A DNA stretch of 64,000 nucleotides, from positions 651,040,558 to 651,104,557 of the forward strand of contig NC_133619.1 of assembly GCF_048593235.1 (NCBI RefSeq). The letters are read 5' to 3'. The notes under the pieces were generated by a model. That model was not told where the DNA came from, made no database searches, and saw nothing but the letters and a program-made list of their open reading frames with translations. Below, one piece after another: positions 4,201-54,094 of the stretch (position 1 is the stretch's first letter; every line of letters begins with the position of its first letter). Source of the stretch: Sminthopsis crassicaudata (taxonomy: Eukaryota). The translations under genes and the position numbers were made by a program.

Positions 4201-5791
4201 CCCTTCTCTATCCTTTTCTGGAGCCCCTGTCCCCCCCCCCATGCAGCCACAGCAGGGACGACGGGGAGGGGCTCTGCTTCTGCCATCCCTGCTTCCCCAC
4301 TGATGAGGGAGGGGTTACTCAGATGCCCTCAGCCCAATTCCTCTAAGCTGGAAGTGATAGGGCCCAGCTTCTGGGAGGAATGTAGCAGTAATCCTGAGGC
4401 CCCAGAGCTTCAGAGGGCTACTGTTCTGACAAGCTGTCATTGTCCCTAAAGCTTCCTAACTTCAGGAATGCTGTGATAATCTCCTGCAAACTTTCCTGAC
4501 TGCCAGACAACAATCTCTGGGGCTGTGACATTAGGGTTTCTGAGACAACTGGTGAGGTGCATACCAGACCCCTCCCCAGTTCTGCTCCTGGGCCATAAAA
4601 TTAGCAGATCCACCGGTGACATGAAGAACCAGATCTGTCTTTTCCTGTAAAATTATCTTCTTGCTCCTGGTTCTTTGCTAAATCCCTCTGAAACTTATCC
4701 CACTTCAATTAGCTTACAAGTATGTGAATGTTGGCCTTTGACTTGGAGATGGGGTCAAACCTGCAAATTCTTTTGGGACACCTTGAGACCCCAGTCTGTC
4801 ATGGGCCAGAACTCTGGAGAAGTATCCTGAAGGCTCAGTATGATTGATTTAGTGTTACAATAAGGGGTTAACTCAGTGCAATTGATGAGACAATGGTTAT
4901 CTAGTCTTACATGTACTTGGTACTTCATATAGTATCCGTCCCAAGATATCATCCATATAATGTAACAATATTACTTTTGGAAAGGCTTTTCTTACTGGAG
5001 CATGAGCAGCAGCAACATACATTTGGCACGTAGTAGGGCTGTTTTTTCATTCCCTGTGGCAAAACTGTCCATTCATATCTTTTCTAAGGCTCAGCTAGTT
5101 AACTAAGTTAACGCTGGGCACTGAGAAGGCAAAACTTTTCATATCCTCCTTATATTGAGGAATAGAATAGAAACAATCCTTAACGTCTATAACCCAAGGA
5201 GGCCATTCTCTAGGCAACTGAGTAGGAGATGGAAGTCCAGGCTGAAGAGTTCCCATAGTTTCCATCTGTTCATTTACTCTTCTTAGATCAGTTAACATCC
5301 TCCCTTTTCCAGATTTCTTTCTTACAACAAATACTGGGGAATTCTAAGGACTTAGAGAAGGTTGTAAGTGTCCTTGGTCAAGTTCCTCCTGTCCTATATC
5401 TAATAAGGCCTGAACTTTTTCACTTTGAAAGGGCCACTGTTCTAGCCACACTGGTGTATCAGTTTTCCTTTGAATGGGAACAGGTGAGAGTGTGGGCAGT
5501 CCTTCACCTGCAGCCCTGCCTAAAAAATGGAGGAAGCTGAGGAATCCTGCCCCCACTGATGGGGGCCTGAGATCTGGGGGTCTTGTGCCTCTCCCAGTGA
5601 CTTCTCTCCTCCTCCCAGATCCTGCACCCCAAGATTACACGGTGGGCAACGTCATCCGCCTCAGCCTGGCCGGGCTGGTGCTCATCCTCCTGGGGGTCCT
5701 GCTGGCTGAAGCCTGGAATAGCTCCAAGGGACACCCAGGGGGAGCTCCTGCACCTTCTGATACAAGGGAAGGTAGAGCTGGGGGGCACTGA
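1257..5791 (+). CDS. Receptor A: activating two-Ig LRC-family (GP6/LILRA-like) receptor, about 296 aa
   Basis: Exons 1257-1290 ([11 protein letters not shown]), 1534-1569 (36-nt mini-exon), 1721-2005 (Ig D1), 3251-3544 (Ig D2), 3903-3971 (Pro/Ser/Thr stalk), 5619-5791 (TM and tail). All GT-AG, phase 1, 891 nt open. [31 protein letters not shown] has the Arg typical of FcR-gamma-coupled LILRA/GP6/OSCAR/FCAR. No Tyr motif in the tail. Confidence 0.88.
2180..2390. mobile_element. MIR/Mar1-like SINE remnant in receptor A intron 3
   Basis: Core-SINE-like motifs cccatcttacaggtggggaaactgagg and ggatttgaactcagg. Similar remnants near 26100-26220, 37010-37130, 39360-39410, 39670-39770 and 48520-48550. 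Confidence 0.45.
2860..3010. repeat. CT-rich low-complexity tract in receptor A intron 3
   Basis: (CT)n/(CTCCC)n-like sequence; the ORFs over it are compositional artefacts. Confidence 0.85.
4797..4935 (+). mobile_element. 5' fragment of an LTR of the same family as 25376-26086
   Basis: Starts tgtcatgggccagaactctg (vs tgttatgggccagaactctg at 25376) and shares gagacaatggttatct. Confidence 0.6.
4941..5500 (-). pseudogene. Betaretrovirus-like (class II ERV) reverse transcriptase fragment
   Basis: Minus-strand translation gives [44 protein letters not shown] and [10 protein letters not shown] (YMDD at 4948-4959). Contains stops and a frameshift in an A-run near 5042-5047. Confidence 0.9.
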
Positions 5792-7745: not shown

Positions 7746-8235
7746 TGTAGAGGGCCAGTAAGTCCATGAACTACCTGTTCCATCCATGTGCTAGCAGCAC
7801 TTGCCTGGTCTACAAGGTCAAGGTGTCCTATCCTCTGCCTTGGTTGCAAAGAAGTAGTGAGCCTGCCACACATCAATCCTCAACTGCACAGAGTGTGTCA
7901 CACCTGCAGGGCTTATTATCTGCTTTCTGCTAACCCACTGCATAATTTAGGGAGTTAATTATTTTCACCTTTACTAGAAAATTAAGAGGAAACTACAACT
8001 ATCTGGCTATTACTTGGGAACATTCTAAAGCTGTTAACTAAGATTTGTGGAGTTATTATCATGTTAAACCTAAAACTGGTCATTATTGTGTGTGGAGCAG
8101 GAGGGAAGAGGTGAAAGAAGCCTCATCAACTAACCTTCAAGAATGAGAGTGCAGCAGGCTTTTCTCCCTTCACGGAGGTGGGCGGCGCTATCAAACAGCA
8201 CAGCCCACCAAAGCTTTAAGAAGAATGGGGGGTGG
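7746..8235 (+). mobile_element. Probable ERV 3' LTR remnant preceded by a polypurine tract, interrupted by L1
   Basis: aaaaagggggaag (7732-7744) followed by tgtag. A hydrophobic env-TM-like stretch (VILILIGLVPCAFGCVL) lies just upstream. Right boundary uncertain. Confidence 0.4.
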
Positions 8236-10365
8236 CCAAAGACTCTGCTAAAAAGCTATTAGAAATAATTCAGAACTTTAGCAAAGTTGCAGGATACAAA
8301 ATAAATCCACATAAATGCTCAGCATTTTTATACATCACCAACACAATCCAACAGCAAGAAATACAAAGAGAAATTCCATTCAAAATAACTGGCGATAATA
8401 TAAAATATTTGGGAATGTATCTACCAAAGGAAAGTCAGCAATTATATAAGCAAAATTACAAAACACTTGCCACAAAAATAAAGTCAGATTTAAATAATTG
8501 GAAAGACATTAAGTGCTCTTGGATAGGCCGAGCAAATATAATAAAGATGACAATACTCCCTAAACTAATCTATTTATTTAGTGCTATACCAATCAGACTC
8601 CCAAGAAACTAGTTTAATGACCTAGAAAAAATAATAACAAAATTCATATGGAAGAACAAAAGGTGGAGAATTTCAAGGGAAGTAATGAAAAAAAATTAAA
8701 TGAAGGTGGTCTAGCTGTACCTGATCTAGAACTGTATTATAAAGCAACAGTCGCCAAAACCATTTGGTATTGGCTAAGAAATAGACTAGTTGATCAGTGG
8801 ACTATGTTAGGTTCAAGATAGTGAATAAAAATAGCAATCTAGTGTTTGACTAACCCAAAGATCCCAACTTTTGGGATAAGAATTCATTATTTGACAAAAA
8901 GTGCTGGGAAAACTGGAAATTAGTATGGCAGAAACAAGGCATGGACTCACACTTACCACCACATACTAAGATAAGATCAAAATGGGTCCATGATTTAGGC
9001 ATAAAGAACGAGATCATAAATAAATTAGAGGAACAGAGGATAGTCTACCTCTCAGACCTGTGGAGGAGGAAGGAGTTTGTGCCCAAAGGAGAACCAGAGA
9101 TCATTATTGATCACAAAATAGAAAATTTTGATTACATCAAATTAAAAAGCTTTTGTACAAACAAAACTAATGCAAACAAAATTAGAAGGGAAGTAACAAA
9201 TTGGGAAAACATTTTTACAGTTAAAGGTTCTGATAAAGGCCTCATCTCCAAAATATACAGAGAATTGACTCTAATTTATAAGAAATCAAGCCATTCTCCA
9301 ATTGATAAATGGTCAAAGGATATGAATAGACAATTTTCAGATGATGAAATTGAAACTATTTCTAGCCATGTGAAAAGATGCTCCAAATCACTATTAATCA
9401 GAGAAATGCAAATTAAGACAACTCTGAGATACCACTACACACCTGTCAGATTGGCTAAGATGACAGGAACAAATAATAATGAATGTTGGAGGGGCTGTGG
9501 GAAAACTGGGACACTAATACATTGTTGGAGTTGTGAAAGAATCCAGCCATTCTGGAGAGCAATCTGGAATTATGCCCAAAAAGTTATCAAACTATGCATA
9601 CCCTTTGACCCAGCCATACTACTACTGGGCTTATATCCCAAGGAAATACTAAAGAAGGGAAAGGGACCTGTATGTGCCAAAATATTTGTGGCAGCCCTTT
9701 GTGTAGTGGCTAGAAACTGGAAAGTGAATGGATGTCCATCAATTGGAGAATGGCTGAATAAATTGTGGTATATGAATGTTATGGAATCTTATTGTTCTGT
9801 AAGAAATGACCAGCAGGATGAATACAGAGAGGCTTGGAGAGACTTAAATCAACTGATGCTGAGTGAAACGAGCAGAACCAGAAGATCATTATACACTTCA
9901 ACAACAATACTGTATGAGGATGTATTCTGATGGAAGTGGAAATCTTCAACATAGAGAAGAGCTAATCCAATTCCAATTGATTAATGATGGACAGAATCAG
10001 CTACACCCAGAGAAGGAACATTGGGAAATGAGTGTAAACTGTGAGCATTTTTTGTTTTTCTCCGCAGGTTATTTTTACCTTCCGAATCCAATTCTTCCTT
10101 TGCAACAACAACAACAACAACAACAAAATTCGATTCTGCACATATATCTTGTACCTAGGATATAGTATAACATATTTAATATTATGGGAATGCCTGCCAT
10201 GTAGGGGAGGGGATGGAGGGAAGAAGGGGAAAAATTCAGAACAGAAGGGAGTACAAGGGATAATGTTGTCAAAAATTACCTATGCATATGTACTGTCAAA
10301 AAATGTTATAACTATAAAATTAATTTTAAAAAATTAAAAATAAAATAAATTAACACTGAAAAAAA
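8236..10365 (+). mobile_element. 5'-truncated L1 (3' part of ORF2, 3' UTR, poly-A)
   Basis: ORF2 fragments 8232-8612 and 8941-9930 (CWRGCGKTGTLIHCW). Same family as the full-length L1. (CAA)n in the 3' UTR. Imperfect TSD aagaagaatggggggtgg / aagaagagtggaggtgg. Confidence 0.95.
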
Positions 10366-24416: not shown

Positions 24417-27400
24417 ATGAGCCCCGCCCTCTCTGCCCTGCTGTGCCTTGGTGAGTCCTAAGAACCCCCACAATGGAGGGGACTTTACAGAGCCCCAATT
24501 TCAGCCCACCCCACCGCCATTTTGTAAGGGGAAAGAGGCCAGCAAGATGGGGAGGCGGAGGAGCTAGAGGCCCGGGGGGTCCCTGAGCCGGCTCTGTCTC
24601 CTTGCTCTGGGGTGCTGGGCGGGGAGGGTGCGGGTGCTGACCCACAGTAATCAGGCTCCTCTCTGCCAGGACTGTGTCTGGGCCACAGGATGAGGGCGCA
24701 GGTGGGTGAGTCCTTCCCCCCAGAGCAGACAGCTCCCCCAGGGAGGGAGGTGGGGGCGGTCTGGGCTGCACTGCAGGGCTTGAAGGGGGGACCCGGTTTG
24801 GGGGGGCCCAGAGCAAGGGGATCCCCTGGAGCTGACAGCTCTCATTCCCTTCCAGACGAGCTCCCCAGACCCTCCCTCAGGGCAGAGAATGGCTCACTGA
24901 GCCCCCTAGGGAGAAGAGTGACCTTCAGGTGCCGGGGGTCACAGGGGGCTGCTGAATACGTTCTGGAGAAAGAGCTGGGACGTGAATTAAAACCTATCAC
25001 CTACGTGCTGTCAGAGGAAGCTGAGGTCGAGTTTTCCATCCCACGGATGACACTGAATGACGCAGGGAACTACTCCTGCAGCTACAGAACAGCATCCCGC
25101 TGGTCAGAGCGCAGTGACCCCCTGGAGCTGGTGGTCACAGGTGAGGAAGCCCAGGTCCCTCTGCCTCAGGCAGGGCTGGCGCAGGGTCCTGGCAGCCCCT
25201 GAGCTCCTCCCCAGCCCAGCCGGGTCCCAAGCTGCCCTCTGACCCTGCCCTTCCCTCCTCCACCCTGCCCCTGCCTCTGCTCTGCCCTGGGGCTAGAAGT
25301 GGGGAAAGGGAAGCAGCATTTATACAGCACCTACTGTATGCCAAGCAGTTTACATTATAATGCCATGAGAGCCTCTGTTATGGGCCAGAACTCTGAACTT
25401 GAAACAAAGGATGCTTCCAAGGTACTCAGTCAGTGGAATTGAGGAGACAATGGTTATCTGGTTTAGCAGGTTCAGAATGTTTGATTTAATCTTACAACAA
25501 ATAATGGCTTCCTCGTGATATAATGATTGGTTTATACTCCGTGTGGAGCATATAAGCAGGGACTCAGGAAGTCCTCAGGTGCAGAGATGAGAAAAGACAA
25601 GAGAACTGGAGGCAGGAGTTCAAGCTCTCAGAACCAAGGAGAGAGTCATCGTCTTCAGTCAGGCTCCTGGGGGCCTGAGACACTCGGGTTCAGGGAAGAC
25701 AGGCGGACTGGAGGCTGAAGCGCAAGCCCTTGGACTCAGGTTCATTCATCCCATCGCACGCCATCCTGCTGGCAGGCTCTCCTTGGCTTCTCCACTGAAA
25801 CCAAGGCTCCCAAAGGAAAGCCTCGCTAAGAAAGCTGCCCCACTGGGCTCAGACACTTACCACTTCCTGGCTGTGTGACCCTGGGCAAGTCACTTACCCC
25901 AGCCTCAGGAAAAAAAGAAAGAAAAGAAAAGAAAGCTGCCCCAGGGCCCCAGGAAAGGAAACTAGATTGTGAAGGAGATAATAAAGGATTTGGACTTTAA
26001 CACCGGGCTGTGCTTGTGGTGATTACTGAACTGAAGCAAAGGCTGCTCCCAGAGACCCCAGGAAAACCGAACCAGACAGCATTACAATGCTCACAATAAC
26101 TCCGCCAGCTGAATGCTATCCCACCTTGCATGTGGGAAAACTGAGGTGACCAGAGAGGAAGTGACTAGCCCAGGATCATCTTGTTGGAAAGTGTCGGAGG
26201 CTGGATTTGAACTCCTGAGTCCAGGCCACGGCTTTGGCCTCTGCGCCCCCAGCTGCCTCAATTAGATCCCACTTTGGGACAAAATGGAGGCAGGAGGTTC
26301 AGCTTAGGACTCAGGAGTCTAGACAGAGCTGTGGCTCCCTGGGAATGAAACAAGGGGCTGGTGGGCCATCTCCCCCTCCCAGCTCTGACCCTCTCAAGCC
26401 AGAGGGGAGTAGAGGGGCCTGCTGCTGCTCTGTGCCCTCCCCCCACTCAGACCTGGGCACAGGTTCTTCTGGGTAGCTCTAGGGTCTCTGTGGGACGGAC
26501 GGCAGGATAGAAGGGAACCGGGAATCCCAGCCAAGCCTCTTATTGTCCGTCCCAGGCACCTGCCCAGGGTCCACAGTGAGAGCAGCCTCTGCTTTGGGGG
26601 CGATGGCCAGCCCACACGGGTCGTACCCGGCCATAACTCTGCCCCCGCGGGACACCCAGCCCCTCAGTGGAGGGATTCTGTGAGAGAGGCCAGCCCCCTG
26701 CCAGGGAGGAAGCCTCTGGACCATGGCTCCTTCCTTGGAACTGACCCAAATTGTCTCTCTCTGTCTCTGAATCTGTCTCTCTTCCCTGCCTCCTGTCTTT
26801 CTCTCGGTGACTTTTTCAGTCTGTTAGACACTCTCTGCATTTCCCTCCCTTCCTCCCTTTCTCTCTGTCTCTCCCCCCTCCTCCCTCTCTCTCTCTCTCC
26901 CCCTCCTCCCTCTCTGTCTCTCCCCCCTCCTCCCTCTCTATCTGTCTCTCCCCCCTCCTCCCTCTCTCTCTGTCTCTCCCCGCTCCTCCCTCCCTCTCTA
27001 CCTGTCTCTCCCCCCTCCTCCCTCTGTCTCTCCCCCCTCCTCCCTCTCTACCTGTCTCTCCCCCCTCCTCCCTCTCTCTCTCTCTCCCCGCTCCTCCCTC
27101 CCTCTCTACCTGTCTCTCCCCCCTCCTCCTTCTCTCTCTGTCTCTCCCCCCTCCTCCCTGTCTGTCTCTCCCCCCTCCTCCCTCTCTACCTGTCTCTCCC
27201 CCCCCTCCTCCCTCTCTAGCTGTCTCTCCCCCCTCCTCCCTCTCTGTCGGCCTCTCCCCCTCCTCCATCCCTCTCTTTCTCCCCCCTCCTCCCTCCCTCT
27301 CTTTCTCCCCCCTCCTCCCTCCCTCTCTACCTGTCTCTCCCCCCTCCTCCCTCTCTCTCTGTCTCTCCCCCCTCCTCCCTCTCTCTCTGTCTGCCTCTCC

Positions 27401-29686
27401 CCCTCCTCCCTCCTCTCTGTCTCTCCCCACTCCTCCCTCTCTCTCTGTCTCTCCCCCCTCCTCCCTCTCTCTCTGTCTGCCTCTCCCCCTCCTCCCTCCT
27501 CTCTNNNNNNNNNNNNNNNNNNNNNNNNNNNNNNNNNNNNNNNNNNNNNNNNNNNNNNNNNNNNNNNNNNNNNNNNNNNNNNNNNNNNNNNNNNNNNNNN
27601 NNNNNNNNNNNNNNNNNNNNNNNNNNNNNNNNNNNNNNNNNNNNNNNNNNNNNNNNNNNNNNNNNNNNNNNNNNNNNNNNNNNNNNNNNNNNNNNNNNNN
27701 NNNNNNNNNNNNNNNNNNNNNNNNNNNNNNNNNNNNCTCTCTGTCTCTCCCCACTCCTCCCTCTCTCTCTGTCTCTCCCCCCTCCTCCCTCCCTCTCTCT
27801 CTGTCTCTCCCCCCTCCTCCCTCTCTGTCTCTCCCCTTCCTCCCTCTCTGTCTCTCCCCCCTCCTCCCTCTCTCTCTGCCTCTCCCCCTCCTCCCTCCCC
27901 TCTGTCTCTCCCCCACTCTCTTTCCTTCTCTCTCTTCCTGCCCTCCGGCTTTTTCCCTCCCACTATTCAAGCACCCACTTTCTTTTCTTCCCCCAGAGGT
28001 TTCCAAGGCCTTTTTTTACCCAAAAACCTCTAATATTTGTTTATTCTGGACGTGAGTTGAATCTCCAGCCCATCCTGGGGTCCAGGCAAGCCCAGGCCAG
28101 CCTCCGGCGGCCAGATCTGCCCCCACAGAAAAGGGGCTTTACAGCCCTAACTTCAGCCCCTCCCCCCCCCCAGAGCTGTACCACCCCCCCTCCCTCTCAG
28201 CCTGGCCCGGCTCCACGGTGGCCGAAGGACAGAACGTGAGCCTCCAGTGCCGGGCCGAGAAGGGATATGACCGCTCTGCCCTGTACAAGGACGGAGCACC
28301 GGTCACCCAGGCCTCGGCCCAGCCCCATGGACGGGGCTCTCAGGCCAATGTCTCCATCCCTGCTGTGACCTCTGCCCACGGAGGGACGTACCGCTGCTAC
28401 AGCTTTCAGAGCCACGCCCCCCATGAGTGGTCAGCCCCCAGTGACCCCCTGGAGCTCAGGGTCACAGGTGAGAGACCCCGCCCCCTTCCTCCCAGCCCTC
28501 CTAAGCTCCCTCCCTAGTCCGGGCACCTCGCTGCCTGCTCAGGGCCCTGTCCCAGGGGTCCCCGGGGGCCAGAAGGACTGGGGGGTGAGCTTCAGAGCAG
28601 GCAGGGTCTGAGTAATGGGTAGGGCTCAGACAATGCAGACCCTCGGGCCTCTGCTCCCTGGCCCTCTAGCCTCCCTCACCATCTCCCACCGCCCACTTCT
28701 GCTGGTCCCCCATATGTCTCCTGGGTCCCAGGTAAGGGGTTCAGGAGAGAGGAGCAGAACTGGGGTATAGCCAGAGGGTAAATACCCACAAGCCCCTCAC
28801 CCTTTCCCTCTCCCTGTACCGGACACCTCCAGCACCCTGGGAATCCCCAGCTCTGACCCCCTCCCCACCAGCGAGGAGGGGTGGGAGTCTCTGATCCTCT
28901 CCTGCTCCTGCTGCCTAAGCCAGGGCTGAGTCTCCCCCCTGTGTGGGAGCAGGGGGAGGGACGGAGAGCTGGGACAGGCAGGAGGAACTCCAAGCCAGGG
29001 AAGGAGGAGCATGGCTGGCCTGGGAGGGGGCTGGACATGTGGGAGCAGAGATGGGCAGGGCGGCCCCAATTCTGCTCCCTTCTCTCTCTTCCCCATTCCT
29101 CCCGGGGGCCCCCACCCCTCCCCCATGCAGCCATAGCAGGGACTATGGGGAGGGGGCTCTGCTTCTGCATCCCTGGCGTGGCCAGGCTCACACAGAGAGG
29201 AAGTGTCTGAGGTGGGATGGGAACTCGCCTCTTCCTCACCACAAGCTCTACCCACTCCCCAAGCTGTTGCCAACATGGTGGGAGATGAAGAATGAGGGGG
29301 AGGAGAGGAAGTGAGGGCCAGGGGGATCTGGGCCTGACTCAGGGGCCTGCAGAGGAAGCCCTGAGGGGGAGCAATAGGGGAAGGAAGCTGCCTGAGCCCC
29401 TCCCTCAGCCCCATCCCCAGGCTCCCAGCCCAGGGAGAGGGGCTGGGGCTGAGCCTGGGGAGAGCTGAGGAATCCTGCCCCCACTGACGGGGGCCTGAGA
29501 TCTGGGGGTCTTGTCCCTCTCCCAGTGACTTCTCTCCTCCTCCCAGATCCTGCAGCCCAGGATTACACGGTGGGCAACGTCATCCGCCTCAGTCTGGCCG
29601 GGCTGGTGCTCATCCTCCTGGGGGTCCTGCTGGCTGAAGTCTGGAATAGCTGCAGGGAACCCAGGGGGAGCTCCTGCACCTTCTGA
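24417..29686 (+). CDS. Receptor B: activating two-Ig LRC-family receptor, paralogue of A, about 262 aa
   Basis: Exons 24417-24450 (Kozak accaccATG), 24670-24705, 24856-25140, 28174-28467 and 29547-29686. GT-AG, 789 nt open. [31 protein letters not shown] with Arg. Intron 3 contains an assembly gap. Confidence 0.87.
25376..26086 (+). mobile_element. Solo LTR in receptor B intron 3
   Basis: TG...CA termini, TATA-like catataag near 25547, AATAAA 25980-25985. Empty site in receptor A at about 2240 (gagagcctc ataataac). Imperfect 6-bp TSD agcctc/atgctc. Confidence 0.85.
25843..25928 (+). mobile_element. 5'-truncated marsupial SINE (WSINE1-like) inside the solo LTR
   Basis: ctggctgtgtgaccctgggcaagtcactta core, A-rich tail, exact 15-bp TSD aagaaagctgcccca (25828-25842, 25929-25943). 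Confidence 0.8.
26750..27930. repeat. Expanded CT-rich tandem repeat (ctgtctctcccccctcctccctct-like units) containing the assembly gap
   Basis: Many imperfect copies of about 24-30 nt. N-run at 27505-27736. The homologous tract in A is only about 150 bp. Confidence 0.92.
27505..27736. other. Assembly gap (232 N)
   Basis: Run of n characters inside the CT repeat. Confidence 1.
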
Positions 29687-31049
29687 CACATGGGAAGCCA
29701 GAGCTGGGGGGCACTGAAGGCATGGATCCCAAAGATTCCCAGAGTTCTGCCCACACCCAGACAGAGGAAGGATCCAGCCTTTGGGGGGTCTACACCAATC
29801 TCATCATTTGGTGGCGAGTGTCCACACCATCCCCATCAAGGGTATGGCAGGAGCAATCCACCCGAGCCTCCTCCTGCACTCCTTGGCCATCCTGGCTCTG
29901 GGGGCCCTAAGCCCACCCTGACCAGCAGCAGGACCCCTGCTTCCCCCCACGACCTCTCCCAAATCAGGACAAGCCTTCCCTCAGCTGGCCCGGCCCACAA
30001 ACCCTCTCTGCCCCGAGCTCTCCTCACATCTGCTGCCTGCAGTTGCAGACCCGGCTTCCTGAGGTGCACAAGAAGGCATTTGCACCCCTGGGTTCCTGAG
30101 GAGACCAGAGTCAACCTTCCTGTGGGAATCTGAGGGAGCTGCCCTTGCTTCCACCTGTAGCTGGCCTTCATCACAGCTTGAGGCTCTTGTCTCAGATGCT
30201 AAACGTGCCCCTTGCCCATGACTGCCCATGCCCCCAGAGGGCGCTCTCCACCCAAAGGGCCAGACTCCCCTCAAGGTCTGTCTCTATCTTTGTCTCTCTC
30301 TCTCTCCCCTTGTCTCTCTGTCTTTGTCTCTTCCCTTGTCTCTTTCTCTATCTCTTCTTATGTCTCTGTCTCTTTCTCTGCCTGTCCCTGTCTGTTTCTC
30401 ATTATCTCTCCCTTCCTTTTTCCCTGATTTCCTCCCTCCTTCATTCTCTTTCCGTCTCCCCCACTCTTTCTGTCTCTCTCTCCCTCTCCCCCCACTAACC
30501 CATCTACTTTCCCAAGAATTTAATCAGATGGAAAGACCTATGTCTCAAAAAGTATTGAGGATGGAGGATTCTGGGAAGGTGGGGGAGTAGGTTGGTAAAT
30601 TTCAAGATCTCTCCATTTTCCCCACAAAAAGAACAAATTTGCCCTTCAGGGCAAACACAGACTGGTGAAAAATCAAGAAGACTTGGGGCAAGACAAGGTC
30701 CTCCTGGTATGACTCAAGATCCAAAGAAAAACCCAGAGAGAGCTGGGTGTGGCTGGAGTCTCAACAGGAATTGCAGAGACTTTCACTTTCTGGACAGTGA
30801 AAGAATTGGGGTTTGAGCCTGGGAAGACTGAGGGAACCTCTGCTAAGTGGGAAGACTAGGCCAAGCTGTGCTGCTGACACAATCCTGTCCTGGACAAGGA
30901 GCCAATCCATCAGGGAGGGAGGCTGCTGGCTGCGGGCACTTGCTGGAGGGCAGAGCCCTTGGATTAGGGTTCCTGGTCAGAGAGGAGAGCTGAAGTGAGA
31001 CTAGAGGCACCACCCCTCCACCCCAGGAATAGACGTGCTTACACAAATA

Positions 31050-36790: not shown

Positions 36791-37947
36791 TTTAAAACAG
36801 ATAATCCTATACCTTTAAAAAAAAAAAAAAAAAAAAGGATGCCTGAAAATTTTTGTAAGCTTTTCTTAGCAAAGGCTCCTCAGTTGTCCGCACTTCCCAA
36901 AGAGAAGCCTAAAGCCTATTTCCATTGGCAGTGGAAAAGCTAGTTAGGATATCAAGGAAACCCCCAAGGAAGCTTTGTTTTCTGCTTGAATGTGTAATGT
37001 GTTGGTTATATCACCCCAGTTTACGGAAAAGGAAATTGAAGCCCAGAGAAATAACATCTCCTGTCACATACAAGTCACATACAAGTACTACATGGCAAGA
37101 GTGAGATCTGAATCTATGTCCTCCCATTCCAAAAACAGCCTCCATTCTGCTGTACCACATGCAGGTCCTCTTCTACCCTGAAACTGGAAAACCTCCCAAG
37201 ACTTCATAACGGGTACTTTTGAAGGAAAGGAGAGATTGGAACATCATCTTCCAAAAGGCAAAAGATCAGGTTTCCAACCTGGGTGACTGCTGAAGTCTGC
37301 TCCCCGGGGCTCAAGAAAGCTGATCCCTGCGCTTTAAGGTGGCATGTGAGTGTATAAAACTGTGTACATTATTAATCTGAAATTAAACACCAAAAAGGCG
37401 CCTCTGTATCCTCTGCCTAATCACTACTCAATGACTTTACTTGACACAAGAGGGGAAAAAGCCTCCACTCCACAGACCTTGCTGCTTGAAGCATGTGATC
37501 GCTTGCTCATTTTGTACTTGTCTGCCTTCCTGTTCTGCTTGTGGCCCTTCCTCCACAACTTCTTCCTCTTCTCTCCTGGGCTTTCAAATGCAGCAGCCCG
37601 GGTGGAGACTGTGTGGAGACCGTGTAGCACCAGCCCCATGCTGCCCTTCACTCCATCCACGTCTCTGAAATCATCCTTTTCTGACTGCCACTGGGACCAT
37701 CGCCTTCCTTGCCTGCAAGCCCATGACCATGTTCTCTGACATTCCCCAGGGGACAGCTATCTCCTGAGACCCTGGTGCCTGCATTGGAGTCAACCGGCTT
37801 TGACTCATCCCTCCGGCCTAATGAAGGACGTCTTCTTCCAGATTCATCGTTGGGCGGGAGCAGGGCATGAACTTGGAGAAGGCCACTCTGACCACATCCC
37901 GTGCCCGTGACGCTCCGCTAAGAGCCCTGCACTCGCCCTCGGGCACA

Positions 37948-40839
37948 ATGGCCCCCGCACACACTGCCCTGCTGGGCTTCGGTAAGTCCTGGGAAGTGGG
38001 AGAGCCATGATTCCAGAGGCAGCCTCAAAGCTAGACCTGCCTGGACCCTGCTCCGGGCCCAACAGAGCAGGAAAAGAAGGGCCAGTGAGAAGGGGCCCAG
38101 CCAGCACAGTAGCCGGGGTCCCCTGCTGCCTAAATGCCCCTTGAGTGTGGTGACAAACTTGGGGCTTCTGGGAGCCGAGTCTAATGACAGCCTGTCCTAC
38201 AGGGCTTTGTCTGTGCTGGGGGACCTGGGCACAACAGGGTGAGTCCTTGCCCCAGCTTCCTGCCCCTCCTGCCTGCTCAGCACTGAGAGCTGGGGGGGGG
38301 ACAGGGAAGGGGATACAAGGGGAGGGGGTCTGTGCTGATGGATGATTCTGGGAGGGGGTGGGGGAGGGGCTGAGAGGGGATCTCAAGGCTGATTCTCTTC
38401 CAGACACATTGCCCAGACCCTCCCTCAGGGCTGAGCCAGGCTTGGTGGTCCCCCAAGGGAATCCTGTGAACCTCTGGTGTAAAGGACCCCCTGGAGCTGG
38501 TGTGTACCACCTGAGGAAGAGAGGAAGCAATAATTTTGTGGAAGTTTTTCCAGCTGGGCTGGAAGCCTGGTTCACCATCCCTGAAATGGCAGCAAACACT
38601 GCAGGGAGCTACCAGTGTGTCTACTACTACCAGTCACGGTGGTCAGAGCCCAGTGAGCCCCTGGAGCTGAGAGTGTCAGGTGAGGAGGCTCTGGAGCCCC
38701 TGCGCCCCCAACCCCAGCAGGCCCTGTGGAAGCCGGGACAGGGAGAGGGGGGTGGGCCGGCCGCTGCTCTGTCCCTGTGCCGGCTCCAGCCTGGGCCCAG
38801 AGAGGGGAGGCTCTTCCTGTTCTCAGTCCCGGCTCTCCTGCTCCACCAGGGCTTTTCCCGGCACCCTCCCTCTCAGCCTGGCCCAGCTCCACGGTGGCTC
38901 CAGGACAGGACGTGACCCTCCGGTGCCATTCCCTGCTGTTCTTTGACTGCTCGGCCCTGTACAAGGACGGAGCACCGGTCACCCAGGCCTCGGCCCAGCC
39001 CCATGGACGGGGCTCTCAGGCCAATTTCTCCATCCCTGCTGTGAATTCCACCCCCGGAGGGACGTACAGATGCTACAGCTTTCAGAGCTACACCTCCCAT
39101 GAATGGTCAGCCCCCAGTGACCCCCTGGAGCTCAGGGTCACAGGTGAGACCCCGCCCCCTTCCTCCCAGTCCTCCTAAGCTCCCTCCCTGGTCCTGGGGC
39201 ACCCCTGTTTGAAGGGTCCCAGGACACATCAGGGAGGGCCGGGGCACCCAGAGGCCTGAGGGTGGGCAGGGCCTGGCCAGGTGTCTACTGCAGGGACTCT
39301 GCAGTGCAGAGGGAGGGGGCAGAAGTCTGCTTCTTTCTAACCATTCCCACCTCATGCTTATACTCCCATTGTACAGATGGGAAAGTGAGGCCCAGAGAGG
39401 GGAGGGACTTGCCCAGCACCCCAGAGGGTGAGCCAGGCAGAGCTTGTCCTGGGAACGTGAATCACAGAGGGCCCCGAAGGGCTCCCCTTGCGGGATGGAC
39501 AGCCGGGCTCTAGCTTTTCCCTCTTCCCTGACCGCATCCTTACCCCCCCTTCTCCCACCTCTGGACTTTTGCCCGAGCTGTGCTTGGCATATTTTCCTTA
39601 TTCACTCCCCTCTAAGGTTCACCTCCTACAAAATGTCTTTCCTGAAATCCCCGTTAATCCCTCATCATGTGACAGTTTTACAGATGAGTAAACTGAGGTA
39701 AAGTGCCAGTGACCCCTTCCCAGGGTCACACAGCTAGCAAGTGTCTGAGGCTGGACTGGACTCAGCTCCAAGTTCAGGGTGCGTGGCGCCGGCTGAGTGC
39801 TCCTGAAGGCTCCTCTCCCCTCCTCCCTCCCTTTGGGGAGGGGTCCAGGCTGGGCCTGCGCACCCCTACTGGCCTTCCTTCCCCACGGCGCCCCCACCCC
39901 TGGGCGCCAGCTGAGCACTTCAGTGCTTGCCTCCTGTCTCCCGCCTGCCTGGAGGGGAGAGGAGCCAGCAGGACCTCCGGGCCGGACCACCCAGACCAGG
40001 CCAGGCTCTGGAGTGCGCAGGGCTCGAGTGGCCGGCTCTGGGCCTCCCGGGGACCAGGCGGCCTTAATCTGCGCCCCCCCCCAGCTTCAGCCCCAGCTTC
40101 CTCGGGTCTCACGGCAAGCATCTTGCTGGGGGTCTCAGCGGTGCTCCTCCTCCTCCTCCTCCTCCTCCGCCGCCGCCATCGGGCCAGAATCAGTGAGTTC
40201 TTGGGGCTGGGGGCAGCCGGGCGGAGGGCCTGCACCCCAGGGAAGGCTGACCCCGACTCTCCCCACAGGCAAAGGGAGCAGAGAGGTCAAGAAGACCCTC
40301 AAGAGGTAGGAGCCCAAGATAGACCCGCCCCCACCGCCCCGCCCCCCTTCCCAGACCCTCCCCCACCGCCCCCCACCTTCCCAGACGCCCTCACTCTGCC
40401 TTCTTGTTCCCCAGCTCAGACCCGGCTGCGACCCCCATGGAGGAGAGACTGTGTGAGTGGGGGCAGGGCGGGAGGGGCTGGGGGGTCTGAGGGAAAGGCT
40501 GGGCCTGGGCGGAGCCGGGGTCCTGACCCCCCTCCCCCCCCCTCTGCCTCCAGACGCTGCTGTGGGGGATGGCAGACAGACAGAGGAGGCCAGACAGGAC
40601 GACACTGCCGTGAGTCTCTCAGCTGGGGGGGGGGAGGGGCGGCTTCCCAGGCTCACACGCAGCCGGGGGTCAGGGGTCAGGGTCCTCCCCCTGCTCAGCC
40701 CCCCCTCCCCTCCGGCCAGGCTCCCACCGGGGAAGACCCTCAGCAAGTGACCTACGCGCAGCTGAAGCTCGAGGCCGGGGCCGCGGACCCTCCGCGCTCT
40801 GGCCCAGCGGCGCCCAGCCTCTACGCGGCCCTGCGCTGA
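37948..40839 (+). CDS. Receptor C: inhibitory two-Ig LRC-family (LILRB-like) ITIM receptor, about 332 aa
   Basis: Exons 37948-37981, 38203-38238, 38404-38679, 38850-39143, 40085-40192 (uncharged TM then RRRHR), 40269-40305, 40415-40452, 40554-40609 and 40720-40839. Phases consistent, 999 nt open. Motifs RLYAAV, VTYAQL, SLYAAL. AATAAA 41173-41178. Confidence 0.88.
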
Positions 40840-41634
40840 GCGAGCCCGGGGGCCCAGGAGGGCAGCCCGGCACCTAACGTGCCCTCCCGGGATCCCCAGA
40901 ACGGGACGGAGGCCGCCCGCAAGCCCCCGCCCCCGCCTTCCTCTGTCCACGTTACCAGGGGCGGGGCAGGCAGGGGGACGGAAGGGGAAGCACCGCCCTC
41001 ACGCCCAGCTCCGGACAGACGGAGGGATGGCCCCTGGGTGAAGTGACCCCAGACCGACTCGGACACCGCACCCGCCACCCCTCCCCCTCCGGACTGGAGC
41101 GGACCTGGCCGGCAGGGGGGACGCTGGAGCACAGCCCAGGGCTGAGGGGAGCACTGTGAGGGGCACCACGTGAATAAACACGATTCCGCTCTCCGTCTCC
41201 CCGGATTGCCCGTTCCCACGGCACGGCCCGGGCCTCCCGGGCTCGGTGCTCCCCACCCTCCCTGTGGCCACGAGCGCCTTTGCGGCCAGCCCCGGCCCCC
41301 TCACCCCGCGCGACCTCGGGCTGGACGCCCTGGCCCTTCCCCGGAGCCCGCCGCTATCCGAATCCCCCCTCCCCCATCTCCTCGAGTAAGGCCCGAAGGT
41401 CAATGGTGGTCCGGGTGGGGTCGGTGGCCGGGGCGGCCCAGCCTCCCCAGGAGGCTCCACTGCCGGGCCTCCGGCCACAGGCTTCTTCCTCCCCAGGGCT
41501 CCGGGCTGTAAGCAGGCGGCCCGGGGGGAGTGCAGGGTCCCGCCCCGCCCCCCCTCCCCAAGACCGCAGGCGCGCATTTAGTCAAAGAGCTTTATTCCAC
41601 TTGGAGATAGACTGTGGGGAGGGACGGGTAACTC

Positions 41635-42664
<1,030 letters not shown>

Positions 42665-51171: not shown

Positions 51172-54094
51172 ATGACTCCCGAGGAGTGGCAGTATCTTGC
51201 GATCCTCCTTATCTCCATCCCCGTGGGCTTCCTCTTTAAGCAAGCGGGTGAGTGTGTTCCCCTTCCTGTGGTCCGACTCTGGGCAGATGGGGGAAGGGAG
51301 GGGAGCAGAGGGCCTGGGGGGGGGGGGGCCAGTGCCGAGGCCCGGCCTCCTGTCCCACTGCCTCCCGCTCCCCTCCAGGTCCCGGGCTGAAGCAATGGGG
51401 AGCCGCAGGGGTGGGTGTGGCACTGACCCTGCTCACCTGCGGACCCCACATCCTGCACTCGCTGGCCACCGTCCTGGGCACCTGGATCATCATGGAGACC
51501 TGGCCCAGGTAACTGGCCGGGCCGGCCCGGCAGCCCCTCCCCCCCGCCCTCTGGCCCAGTTGGGAAGAGCCCGGCTTGACAGCGGCACTGGTGTCTCTCT
51601 GTCTGTCTCTGTCTGTCCCCTTCCTCTGGGCAGATCCTGCCACGCCCTGGCCCTGGCCTGGACCTTCCTCTACCTCCTCTTCTTCCGCATGGTCACCGTA
51701 TTGGGGCTCCCCGCCCCCACACCCTTCACCAATGCCGTGCAGTTGCTGCTCACACTCAAGGTGAGGTCTTGGAACTTGCAGCTCTCAGCACCTTAGGCTC
51801 CTCCCAGGGATCTCCAGTTGTGGCCCCCAACTCCGAGAGCCCCCCGGAATTCCAGCTCCCCAGGCGGGCTACAGGGCTTAGTTAGTTTGGCCCCTCCTGA
51901 GCTCCCTGGGAGAGATGGGCCAAAAGGGCAGACCCTGACCCTGTGCCCGTTCCCAGCTGGTGAGCCTTGCCAGCGAGGTGCAGGAGCTCCGGGCGCACAA
52001 GGAAGAGGATCCCCAGAAGCGGCCGTCTGTGGGGCAGCTCCTCGCCGTGCCCTCCCTGCCCCAGATACTCAGCTACAGCTACTGCTACGTGGGCCTCCTG
52101 ACGGGTGAGCAGCCCCTGCCCGGGTCCTCTGTCCCCCGGAAGGCCTCCAGCTAGGGGCAGTGCCCTTCTTAAACAGGGACCCCACTGCTGACCCGGGAGC
52201 TTGTGGTCCACTAAGAACACCTGCTCTCTCATCACACCTCCCTGGCATCTTCTAGTGACAACTGCTGGATAGAAAAGTGGGAAAGTGGGTTCAGTCCCAC
52301 CTGTGACAGCAGCCCAGGGACCCTCCACAGCCATTTAACCTCCCTGGGCCCGACTGCTCCTTGGTAAAGTGAGGGGCCTCCAGACCCGCCAAGTGGGGCT
52401 CCGCGATGGGCAGTGTGACACATTGGGTAGGGTTCTCTTGGGCTCCTGCCCGGTACCTCCTAGCCGTGTGAACGGAAGCGCCCATTCTTTGGCAGAATGG
52501 GAAGTCCGGGCAGCTTCTCCCGTGGGGGACCTCATGAGGCGGACCTTGGGCCCTGGTCTGCTGTGCTCCCTCCCGTGGGTCTCCCCAGTGTCCGCTTCTG
52601 CCCCAACCTCTCCTCTCCCTGCATCCACGCCTGCCCTGACCTCTCCCGGCAGGCCCCTTCTACCGCTACCGCACGTACCACGACTGGGTGCACCAAGGCC
52701 CGGCGCCGGTGCCCAGCTGGGAGCCGCTGCTGCTGCGGGCCCGGCCGGCCCCTGTCTTTGGCCTGCTCTTCCTGCTGTCCTCCTGGCTCTTCCCACTGGA
52801 GGCCGTGCGGGAGGACGCCTTTTACGACCGGCCCTTCGCCTTCCGCCTCTTCTACATGGTGCCCGTCTTCTTCGCCTTCCGGATGCGCTTCTACGTGGCC
52901 TGGATCGCGGCCGAGTGTGACTGCATAGCCGCCGGATTCGGGGCCTACCCCGTGGGGGCCAAGTCAAGGGCCGGGGGCGGCCCCACCCAGCCCTATCCTG
53001 CGCCAGACAGGTCAGCATCCACCACGGGTCGGGTCGCTGGGGCCCAGGGATGCCCCTTTCCCCGTGGGCTTCCAGACTCTCCGCGGCTGTGGTCGGTGGG
53101 ACTACCCAGGCCATCCTGTAGTGGGGGAGGGTGCTCTTCCCCGTCCGGGGCCCCTGGTGGCCATCAGCCTGAGATGCAGGGGTGAGGGCCCCCCCACCCC
53201 CAGGCTAAGCTGGGCCCTGCCCTGCGATTGCACCTGCAAGCCTTGAGGGAAGGTTCTGGAGGCAGAGCTGGTCACCCCGGTGGGCCCAGGCCAGTCCCCT
53301 TGGGCTGGGGCGTCAGGGCCCCTCCCGACCTCCAGCCGTCCCTCCAGCCCAGAAGCCGGAGCAGCCACCAAATACGACTACGAGACCATCCGCAACATCG
53401 ACTGCTATCAGACGGACTTCTGTGTACGCGTCCGCGATGGGATGCGGTACTGGAACATGACGGTGCAGTGGTGGCTCGCCCAGTACGTCTACAAGAGTGC
53501 GCCCGCCCGCTCTTACGTGCTGAGGTGAGCCCCCGGGAGCGGGGGTGGGCAGTGGAGGGCCCCGTGCTCCTGACCCCCACCATCCCCCCCACCCACATCA
53601 TCTCCCATCCCCTTGATCCCCACTGTCCCCCTGACTTGCCATCCCCCTGACTCTCTCCGTCCCATCTCCCGCCTCCCCATAGGAGTGCCTGGACCATGCT
53701 GCTTAGCGCCTACTGGCACGGCATCCACCCCGGCTACTACCTGAGCTTCCTGACCATCCCCTTGTGCCTGGCCGCCGAGGGCTGCCTGGAGTCCGGCCTT
53801 CGAAGCCGCCTGGGCCCCAAGGCCCAGCAGGCCTGGGACTGGGCCCACTGGTTCCTGAAGATGCGCGCCTACGACTACATGTGCATGGGCTTTGTCCTGC
53901 TGTCGCTGCGAGACACCCTTCGCTACTGGGCCTCCATCTATTTCTGCATCCACCTTCTGGCCCTGGGGGGCCTGCTGCTGGGGTTGGCCCTGGGCGGGGG
54001 AGGCCCTGGCCGCAGGGGCGGGGGTGCCCGCTCTGAAGCCAAGACCCTCTCAAACAAGCATCCCCCACCCCCCGACAAGTTGCGGGAGGAGTGA
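51172..54094 (+). CDS. MBOAT7: Lysophosphatidylinositol acyltransferase, about 475 aa
   Basis: Exons 51172-51247, 51379-51508, 51634-51760, 51957-52104, 52653-53010, 53348-53524 and 53683-54094 total 1428 nt. Catalytic YWNM and YWHG motifs; ends KLREE. AATAAA 54346-54351. Confidence 0.97.

What the first reader, a model, noticed from the sequence alone, without database searches (positions are those of the whole stretch)
40085..40839. LILRB-type cytoplasmic exon architecture attached to a GP6-like two-domain ectodomain
Seen: the tail exons are 37 nt (ends phase 2), 38 nt (SSDPAATPMEERL/Y), 56 nt (YAAVGD...) and a final exon (EDPQQVTYAQL...PSLYAAL). From memory these match human LILRB (SSPAADAQEENL/YAAVK; PQDVTYAQL; PSIYATL), including the Tyr split across an exon junction. 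The ectodomain has only two Ig domains whose motifs (CKGPPGAGVYHL; ALYKDG...GTYRCYSF...WSAPSDPLEL) recall GP6, while QPHGRGSQANFSI recalls LILR D2. Inference: the LILRB signalling module predates the marsupial-eutherian split, and C may resemble the two-domain ancestral unit.
Basis: partly seen in the sequence, partly recalled or inferred. Interest (0 to 1): 0.7.

Follow-up and report, generated by a model that had tools for sequence, protein, structure and literature searches.

The report
Dunnart inhibitory receptor with LILRB-type tail
This is an intact, already annotated gene of the fat-tailed dunnart for a two-domain inhibitory immune receptor whose signalling tail is built, exon for exon, like that of placental LILRB receptors. 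It is a tidy confirmation of shared ancestry rather than a surprise.

Summary
At 40085-40839 (+) lie a 108-nt transmembrane exon and tail exons of 37, 38, 56 and 120 nt, all with AG/GT sites. The phases are 1-2, 2-1, 1-0 and 0-stop. With a 34+36-nt signal pair and two Ig exons (276, 294 nt) they give one open frame. That frame is letter-for-letter RefSeq XP_074164188.1, 'platelet glycoprotein VI-like isoform X1' of Sminthopsis crassicaudata.

Published primate LILRB1/B2 exons are 34, 36, ..., TM 126, then 76, 38, 53, 156, 147 nt. They have the same phases, the same 38-nt exon and a tyrosine split at the same junction. A profile of placental LILRB tails scores this tail 38.8 bits, against 12.9 for the best of 2000 shuffles. 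KIR and LAIR1-like tails score lower and lack the 38-nt-exon motif.

The ectodomain is most similar to GPVI (46-49% identity). In domain trees it falls in marsupial-specific clades, outside both the GPVI and LILR clades. That is the published marsupial 'M1M2' group A type.

The gene sits next to RPS9, as the LILR cluster does in primates. Genes A and B upstream are activating.

ITIM-tail homology between bird and mammal receptors, and a two-domain ancestor, are already in the literature. RNA evidence could not be obtained. This is a new member of a known kind, of modest interest.

The parts
37948..37981 (+). First coding exon, 34 nt from the strong-Kozak ATG, phase 0-1. RefSeq starts at an in-frame ATG 81 nt upstream (37867).
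   Evidence: The 34-nt length equals LILRB2 exon 3.
38203..38238 (+). Second signal-peptide exon, 36 nt, phase 1-1.
   Evidence: It equals the 36-nt exon 4 of LILRB1/B2. RefSeq isoform X2 skips it.
38404..38679 (+). Ig domain 1 exon, 276 nt, A1/M1 type.
   Evidence: Pfam Ig_2 E 5.7e-12. PDB hits. It lies in the A1 clade (95*) with the devil, Dromiciops and bilby D1 domains.
38850..39143 (+). Ig domain 2 exon, 294 nt, A2/M2 type.
   Evidence: Pfam Ig_2 E 6.9e-9. PDB hits. It lies in the marsupial d2 clade. It is 88.6% identical in DNA to the gene B D2 exon.
40085..40192 (+). Short stalk plus uncharged transmembrane segment and basic stop-transfer, 108 nt, phase 1-1.
   Evidence: Present in RefSeq X1 and X2, skipped in X3. 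Modelled as a helix at residues 248-277.
40269..40305 (+). Cytoplasmic exon 1, 37 nt, phase 1-2.
   Evidence: It has the same phases as the 76-nt exon 12 of LILRB1/B2.
40415..40452 (+). Cytoplasmic exon 2, 38 nt, phase 2-1. It ends with the first base of the Tyr codon of the RLYAAV motif.
   Evidence: Same size and phase as LILRB1/B2 exon 13. Its motif is found only in LILRB-type and marsupial tails.
40554..40609 (+). Cytoplasmic exon 3, 56 nt, phase 1-0. It begins with the last two bases of the Tyr codon.
   Evidence: Its counterpart is the 53-nt LILRB exon 14.
40720..40839 (+). Last coding exon with two canonical ITIMs (VTYAQL, SLYAAL) and TGA at 40837-40839. AATAAA follows at 41173.
   Evidence: Its counterpart is the 147-nt coding part of LILRB exon 16.

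Best explanation
Gene C (37867/37948-40839, + strand) is a functional gene for an inhibitory receptor of the marsupial leukocyte receptor complex. It belongs to group A, the published M1M2 type.

Shown: the protein is a type I membrane protein with a split signal peptide, two C2-type Ig domains, a very short stalk and an uncharged membrane helix. Its 82-residue tail carries one ITIM-like motif (RLYAAV) and two canonical ITIMs 23 residues apart.

Inferred from the established LILRB, KIR and LAIR1 pathway: after ligand binding, Src-family kinases phosphorylate the ITIM tyrosines. The tandem SH2 domains of SHP-1/SHP-2 dock on them, and signalling from ITAM-coupled receptors is shut off. The ITAM-coupled receptors would include the neighbouring activating genes A and B, whose membrane segments carry the FcR-gamma-pairing NxxR motif.

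The tail is homologous, exon by exon, to the placental LILRB/PIR-B tail. It was therefore present in the common ancestor of marsupials and placentals. The ectodomain is a marsupial-lineage descendant of the same A1-A2 ancestor that gave rise to GPVI, LILR, KIR, NCR1 and LAIR. Its GPVI-likeness is retained ancestral similarity, not orthology. The ligand is unknown.
For: The gene model is intact with canonical sites and is identical to RefSeq isoform X1.

Exon sizes and phases match published LILRB1/B2 values: 34/36 signal exons; 38-nt exon; 53 vs 56; 76 vs 37; 147 vs 120. The split Tyr533 of LILRB1 follows from those lengths plus the published Tyr numbering.

Tail scores: 38.8 bits against the placental LILRB-tail profile, with a shuffle maximum of 12.9. 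KIR tails score 24-33 and the LAIR1-like tail 19. The KIR-tail profile gives gene C only 15 bits. The 38-nt-exon motif occurs in 26 of 267 fetched proteins, all LILRB-type or marsupial.

The tail with its ITIMs is conserved in devil, antechinus, bilby, koala, tammar, Dromiciops and opossum.

Domain trees place D1 and D2 in the A1 and A2 clades, within marsupial subclades. The model has pLDDT above 90 across both domains and matches LILRB4, GPVI, LILRB2, NKp46 and KIR equally well.

Synteny: RPS9, MBOAT7, TMC4, LENG1 and CNOT3 lie directly downstream. RPS9 flanks the primate LILR region.

Genes A and B carry DYT..GN..R membrane segments and short tails.
Against: RefSeq isoforms are computed models; X2-X4 skip or retain exons, so the dominant product is unknown.

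The stalk of about 10 residues is unusually short. A missed stem exon between 39144 and 40084 cannot be excluded, though RefSeq has none.

The 23-residue spacing between the ITIMs is shorter than the 30 of LILRB1 and KIR. SHP recruitment is inferred, not shown.
Confidence: 0.85

Rival explanations
1. The gene is intact on paper but silent or decaying, a recent duplicate in a fast-turnover cluster. Under this reading the exon match to LILRB has no present function.
For: No RNA evidence was obtained. Published work finds that RNA-seq supports only 8-16% of marsupial LRC gene predictions. RefSeq lists four isoforms, three of them aberrant.
Against: The 332/359-codon frame is open and all nine exons have canonical sites. 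A devil orthologue is 71% (D1) and 78% (D2) identical and keeps the ITIMs. The tail motifs are conserved across Australidelphia and in opossum.
Confidence: 0.07
2. It is the dunnart orthologue of platelet glycoprotein VI, as the RefSeq name suggests: a collagen receptor that has acquired an inhibitory tail.
For: It has the highest identity to placental GPVI over both domains, 46-49% against 40-45% for LILR. D2 scores 65-88 bits against GPVI D2 and at most 69 against LILR or KIR domains. GPVI gives the highest identity among structural matches.
Against: GPVI D1 and D2 form their own clades (99*, 98*) that exclude gene C. The TM lacks the Arg of the NxxR motif that defines FcR-gamma-coupled GPVI. 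The literature places the marsupial GPVI orthologue elsewhere. The gene lies at the RPS9 end of the complex, where the LILR cluster sits in primates.
Confidence: 0.04
3. The resemblance of the tail to LILRB is convergent, or comes from exon shuffling from another ITIM receptor family, and not from vertical inheritance.
For: ITIMs are short motifs and recur in many families. The LRC is known for exon shuffling.
Against: Three consecutive junction phases, one identical exon length, a tyrosine split at the same codon position and 38.8 bits of profile similarity all agree. The gene also lies in the syntenic position.
Confidence: 0.03

Closest known systems
Placental LILRB receptors (LILRB1-5, mouse PIR-B)
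   Same: 34+36-nt split signal peptide and phase-1 Ig exons. Uncharged TM. Multi-exon tail with the 38-nt exon, the split Tyr of the xLYAAV motif, a 53/56-nt exon and a final exon with VTYAQL plus SxYAxL. Position next to RPS9.
   Different: Two Ig domains, not four or six. No separate stem exons. First tail exon of 37 nt against 76. No counterpart of LILRB1 exon 15 (VTYAEV). ITIM spacing of 23 against 30. Both Ig domains fall outside the placental LILR clades.
Marsupial LRC group A 'M1M2' receptors (MAIR; Guselnikov and Taranin 2019)
   Same: Two-domain M1-M2 ectodomain, linkage to RPS9 and the TMC4-LENG1-CNOT3 block, and membership of a lineage-specific expansion.
   Different: That paper classified Ig and TM exons only and did not analyse cytoplasmic exons. 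Here the inhibitory tail is mapped exon by exon.
Platelet glycoprotein VI (GP6)
   Same: A1-A2 two-domain ectodomain with the highest pairwise identity (46-49%). Shared motifs around the first Cys of D1 and the F-G strands of D2.
   Different: GPVI has a mucin-like stalk, an Arg-bearing TM for FcR-gamma and no ITIM. Gene C has none of the first two and three Tyr motifs. It lies outside the GPVI clades.
Chicken CHIR-B (CHIR2B)
   Same: Two Ig domains, uncharged TM and two ITIMs. Its tail is reported as homologous to the LILR and PIR tails.
   Different: The CHIR-B tail is encoded by two exons, all exons but the last being in one phase. It lacks the 1-2 / 2-1 / 1-0 series seen here and in LILRB.
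KIR3DL/2DL and LAIR1
   Same: The final exon carries VTYAQL and a second ITIM. The KIR tail profile and the LILRB tail profile cross-match.
   Different: The KIR and LAIR1-like tails fetched lack the 38-nt-exon motif. They score lower against the LILRB profile (24-33 and 19 bits, against 38.8). Gene C scores 15 bits against the KIR profile.

Membership tests
LRC group A receptors (LILR/KIR/GPVI/NCR1/FCAR/LAIR and marsupial M1M2) | Ig domains of the A1 and/or A2 subtype | tested here: met
   D1 lies in the A1 clade (SH-aLRT 95) and D2 in the A2 clade (94) of a 123-domain tree rooted on IGSF1. PDB and Foldseek best hits are all group A.
LRC group A receptors (LILR/KIR/GPVI/NCR1/FCAR/LAIR and marsupial M1M2) | Location in the leukocyte receptor complex beside the RPS9-TSEN34-MBOAT7-TMC4-LENG1-CNOT3 block | tested here: met
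   RPS9 at 42017-42268 (-), MBOAT7 at 53247-54091 (+), and TMC4, LENG1 and CNOT3 at 57-63 kb were recognised from ORF translations. TSEN34 was not looked for.
LILRB (inhibitory LILR) family in the strict, placental sense | Uncharged TM and a long tail with 2-4 ITIMs | tested here: met
   Tail translation shows RLYAAV, VTYAQL and SLYAAL, with no charged residue in the TM.
LILRB (inhibitory LILR) family in the strict, placental sense | Tail exon architecture: phases 1-2, 2-1, 1-0, 38-nt exon, split Tyr | tested here: met
   Window exons were compared with published LILRB1/B2 exon lengths. The first exon is 37 against 76 nt, and the exon 15 counterpart is absent.
LILRB (inhibitory LILR) family in the strict, placental sense | Ig domains group with placental LILR D1-D4 | tested here: not met
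   Gene C d1 lies outside the LILR D1 clade, and d2 lies in a marsupial-only clade separate from LILR/KIR.
LILRB (inhibitory LILR) family in the strict, placental sense | SHP-1/SHP-2 recruitment and inhibition of ITAM signalling | not testable with these tools
   Inferred from the motifs only.
Platelet glycoprotein VI | TM arginine (NxxR) for FcR-gamma pairing, and no ITIM | tested here: not met
   The TM exon 40085-40192 has no Arg within the helix, and the tail has ITIMs.
Platelet glycoprotein VI | Orthology: domains inside the GPVI clades | tested here: not met
   The GPVI D1 (99*) and D2 (98*) clades exclude gene C. Marsupial GPVI orthologues were not in the data set.
Platelet glycoprotein VI | Collagen binding | not testable with these tools
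Binding residues were not compared because I hold them only from memory.

The most novel reading that the evidence does not exclude
The last common ancestor of marsupials and placentals already had, at the RPS9 edge of the complex, a two-domain (A1-A2) inhibitory receptor with the full LILRB-type multi-exon tail. Gene C and its devil orthologue would be the least-changed descendants and positional counterparts of LILRB3. The shorter KIR and LAIR1 tails would have arisen from this tail by exon loss, and four-domain LILRs by internal duplication.
Probability: 0.35. Interest if true: 0.4.

Novelty: new member of a known kind. Interest (0 to 1): 0.28.

Why it matters
Marsupial LRC genes are usually said to 'lack orthology' to placental ones, because only their fast-evolving Ig domains have been compared. 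The tail exons give a slowly evolving, phase-defined marker that links marsupial two-domain receptors to LILRB. The marker could help annotate inhibitory members, which automated pipelines often truncate or misname; this gene is called 'GP6-like'. It could also help order the events that produced the LILR, KIR and LAIR tails. It does not change the accepted picture of LRC evolution.

Tried and rejected
Those places lie in the D2-TM intron.

Exon sizes of relatives therefore come only from a primate paper.

(3) The joined spliced model was not sent to any search tool. Searches were made exon by exon by reference or with RefSeq proteins that the tools returned (P0011, P0159, P0269). The join was made only inside scripts, to check the frame and its identity to P0269.

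(4) A word search on the tail alone found only dasyurid relatives. Its exact-word seeding is too strict for an 82-residue diverged tail.

(5) The structure prediction and Foldseek search did not discriminate GPVI from LILR, NKp46 or KIR.

(6) An alternative acceptor that would lengthen the 37-nt exon toward the placental 76 nt was rejected. The only in-phase AG would leave a 34-nt intron (read).

(7) No stem exon between D2 and TM was identified, and RefSeq has none.

(8) Rooting the A2 tree to decide whether marsupial D2 is sister to GPVI D2 or to LILR/KIR failed. It is an unresolved three-way split.

(9) Belov et al. 2007 is not in the held library.
Full report
WHAT IS THERE. The window holds three two-Ig-domain receptor genes on the + strand. 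Their Ig exons lie at about 1.6-3.6 kb (A), 24.7-28.5 kb (B) and 38.4-39.2 kb (C).

For gene C I read every junction in the sequence and checked them by script:
- ATG exon 37948-37981 (34 nt)
- 38203-38238 (36 nt)
- D1 38404-38679 (276 nt)
- D2 38850-39143 (294 nt)
- TM 40085-40192 (108 nt)
- 40269-40305 (37 nt)
- 40415-40452 (38 nt)
- 40554-40609 (56 nt)
- 40720-40839 (120 nt, ending in TGA)

Every exon has an AG acceptor and every internal exon a GT donor. The join is one open frame of 332 codons. The tail phases are 1-2, 2-1, 1-0 and 0-stop. The Tyr codon of the RL|YAAV motif is split one base to two across the 38/56-nt junction. The last exon carries VTYAQL and SLYAAL, with tyrosines 23 residues apart.

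INDEPENDENT MODEL AND ORGANISM. A profile-free scan of 1.8 billion representatives with the D2 exon returned P0011. The cluster look-ups name it XP_074164191.1, 'platelet glycoprotein VI-like isoform X3' of Sminthopsis crassicaudata.
- Isoform X1 (XP_074164188.1, P0269, 359 aa) is letter-for-letter my nine-exon join, started at an in-frame ATG 81 nt further upstream at 37867.
- X2 skips the 36-nt exon.
- X3 skips the TM exon.
- X4 runs into the intron after the 38-nt exon.

The gene and exactly these tail junctions are therefore already in RefSeq, under a misleading automatic name. The joined model itself was never sent to a search tool. Searches used single exons by reference, or these returned RefSeq proteins.

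COMPARISON OF THE TAIL WITH LILRB. Supplementary Table 6 of PMC12827074 gives LILRB1/LILRB2 exon lengths:
- 34 (LILRB2; only 21 nt of LILRB1 exon 3 were covered) and 36 (signal)
- 291/288, 303, 297, 303 (D1-D4)
- 72/54 and 51/48 (stem)
- 126/129 (TM)
- 76, 38, 53, 156, 147 (tail)

The text of that paper assigns exons 12-16 to the tail and puts the stop 147 bp into exon 16. Summing the LILRB1 lengths, with 34 nt taken for exon 3 as listed for LILRB2, gives the same phase series as gene C: 1-2 for the 76-nt exon, 2-1 for the 38-nt exon and 1-0 for the 53-nt exon.

Counting back from the C-terminus places the split codon at Tyr533. This uses the published tyrosine numbers Y533, Y562, Y614 and Y644 and a 650-residue protein. 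The protein length is from my own knowledge. Tyr533 is the Tyr of NLYAAV, the same junction as in gene C.

Against LILRB1, gene C therefore shares the 34/36 signal exons, the 38-nt exon and all phases. It differs by 37 vs 76 nt, 56 vs 53 nt and 120 vs 147 nt. It has no counterpart of exon 15, the VTYAEV exon.

Non-primate placental LILRB-type proteins fetched here show the same peptide layout. They come from horse, deer, pangolin, golden mole, elephant shrew and pika. Several of them also lack the exon-15 segment.

IS IT MORE THAN CHANCE, AND IS IT LILRB RATHER THAN LAIR1 OR KIR?
- A profile built from 11 placental LILRB tails scores the gene C tail 38.8 bits. The best of 2000 shuffles of the same residues scores 12.9.
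- Against the same profile, other marsupial tails score 44-52, KIR3DL/2DL tails 24-33 and a bat LAIR1-like tail 19.
- A KIR-tail profile gives gene C only 15 bits.
- The peptide signature of the 38-nt exon plus split Tyr occurs in 26 of 267 fetched proteins. All 26 are placental LILRB-type or marsupial; none is a KIR or LAIR.

All these tails are visibly related to each other. What is specific to LILRB and gene C is the pair of short exons ahead of the YAAV exon.

DISTRIBUTION. The same tail, with both canonical ITIMs, is present in Tasmanian devil, antechinus, bilby, koala, tammar wallaby and Dromiciops. It is present in a more diverged form in the opossum. In the dunnart it is also attached to receptors whose D1 is of the gene A/B type (P0160, P0165). 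It is thus pan-marsupial and is used as a module.

THE ECTODOMAIN. Both exons are Pfam Ig_2.

Per-domain phmmer scores:

| Query | Target | Bits |
|---|---|---|
| Gene C D1 | placental LILR D1 | 42-72 |
| Gene C D1 | GPVI D1 | 44-59 |
| Gene C D1 | bat LAIR1-like domains | 58-83 |
| Gene C D2 | GPVI D2 | 65-88 |
| Gene C D2 | LILR D2-D4 | 42-63 |
| Gene C D2 | KIR domains | 43-69 |

Over both domains, identity is 46-49% to GPVI and 40-45% to LILR.

I built a maximum-likelihood tree of 123 single domains:
- D1 falls in the A1 clade (support 95), in a marsupial subclade with its devil orthologue, Dromiciops and bilby. It lies outside the LILR D1 clade and the GPVI D1 clade (99).
- D2 falls in the A2 clade (94). 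That clade splits three ways into GPVI D2 (98), all marsupial D2 (83; 93 in the A2-only tree) and LILR D2-4 plus KIR (94).

The GPVI-likeness is therefore best read as shared ancestral character kept by slowly evolving GPVI, not orthology. The AlphaFold model is confident over both domains and the TM helix, and disordered in the tail. Foldseek ranks LILRB4, GPVI, LILRB2, NKp46 and KIR within two orders of magnitude of E-value, so the fold does not discriminate.

This is the published picture. Marsupial M1M2 receptors are the counterparts of placental group A, and the group is thought to descend from one A1-A2 protein.

CONTEXT.
- Downstream of gene C lie RPS9 (- strand, 42.0-42.3 kb), MBOAT7 (53.2-54.1 kb), TMC4, LENG1 and CNOT3. 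RPS9 is the flank of the primate LILR region, and the same block borders the opossum LRC.
- Genes A and B have membrane exons with the DYT..GN..R signature of FcR-gamma-coupled receptors, followed by early stops. They are activating.
- Gene C shares a homogenised D2 with them (88.6% and 82.9% DNA identity). Its D1 is unrelated at the DNA level and belongs to a different marsupial lineage. It is not a simple paired partner of A and B.
- The tail exons occur only once in the window.

HOW IT MOST LIKELY WORKS. Shown: a type I membrane protein with two Ig domains, an uncharged TM and three tyrosine motifs, two of them canonical ITIMs. Inferred from the LILRB, KIR and LAIR1 paradigm: ligand engagement, Src-kinase phosphorylation of the ITIMs, docking of SHP-1/SHP-2, and damping of ITAM signalling in the same cell. 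The ligand and the expressing cell type are unknown.

WHAT IS NEW AND WHAT IS NOT. Laun et al. 2006 already reported significant homology of the ITIM-bearing parts of chicken CHIR, LILR and PIR. They concluded that the primordial receptor was inhibitory. Guselnikov and Taranin 2019 proposed the two-domain ancestor but did not analyse tails. The marsupial LRC papers I could read compare Ig domains only.

The added point here is small but concrete. The fine exon structure of the LILRB tail is shared by marsupials and placentals, whereas the CHIR tail has two exons in a different phase pattern. The shared features are the phases, the 38-nt exon and the split Tyr. I did not find this stated in the held literature, and a specialist would expect it.

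LIMITS.
- Human tail peptides beyond those printed are from my memory and were used only as leads.
- No human contig was fetched or compared.

Noticed in passing
window 5620-5790 and 29547-29690 (+): The membrane exons of genes A and B encode the DYT..GN..R(L) signature of FcR-gamma-coupled receptors, followed by short tails and stops. A and B are therefore activating and C is the only inhibitory gene in the window.
   Followed up: partly
window 40193-40268 (+): The 76-nt intron between the TM exon and the 37-nt exon is open in the frame of the 37-nt exon. There it reads like the coding read-through found in a dunnart paralogue model (P0160, flagged low quality) and in an Ensembl devil model (P0161). 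NCBI's devil model (P0270), Dromiciops and tammar splice it out. Its G/P-rich peptide faintly recalls the end of the placental 76-nt exon. This may be chance in low-complexity sequence or a relic of a longer ancestral exon.
   Followed up: partly
window 37867 vs 37948 (+): There are two in-frame start codons. The upstream one, used by RefSeq and conserved in the devil model, adds 27 residues ahead of the signal peptide. The downstream one has the better Kozak context and gives the 34-nt first coding exon typical of LILR genes.
   Followed up: no
window 38203-38238, 40085-40192, 40453 onward: RefSeq lists isoforms that skip the 36-nt signal exon (X2), skip the TM exon in frame (X3: a TM-less form still carrying the ITIM tail), or run into the intron after the 38-nt exon (X4: no ITIM). 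It is unknown whether any of them is real.
   Followed up: partly
window 38404-38679 vs 1558-2106 and 24651-25199: D1 of gene C belongs to a different marsupial D1 lineage from D1 of genes A and B. The D2 exons of all three are 83-89% identical in DNA. This agrees with the gene-conversion note made on this window by an earlier follow-up.
   Followed up: partly
window 42017-42268 (-), 53247-54091 (+), 57-63 kb: Framework genes RPS9, MBOAT7, TMC4, LENG1 and CNOT3 follow gene C directly. TSEN34 should lie at about 48-52 kb but was not looked for.
   Followed up: partly
window 40720-40839: The two canonical ITIM tyrosines are 23 residues apart in gene C and about 26 in a devil paralogue (hand count). 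LILRB1 and KIR have 30.
   Followed up: no
window 8220-9927 (+) and 27505-27736: There is a long LINE-1 ORF2-like open frame between genes A and B. A 232-base run of N lies just upstream of the gene B D2 exon; it was left untouched.
   Followed up: no
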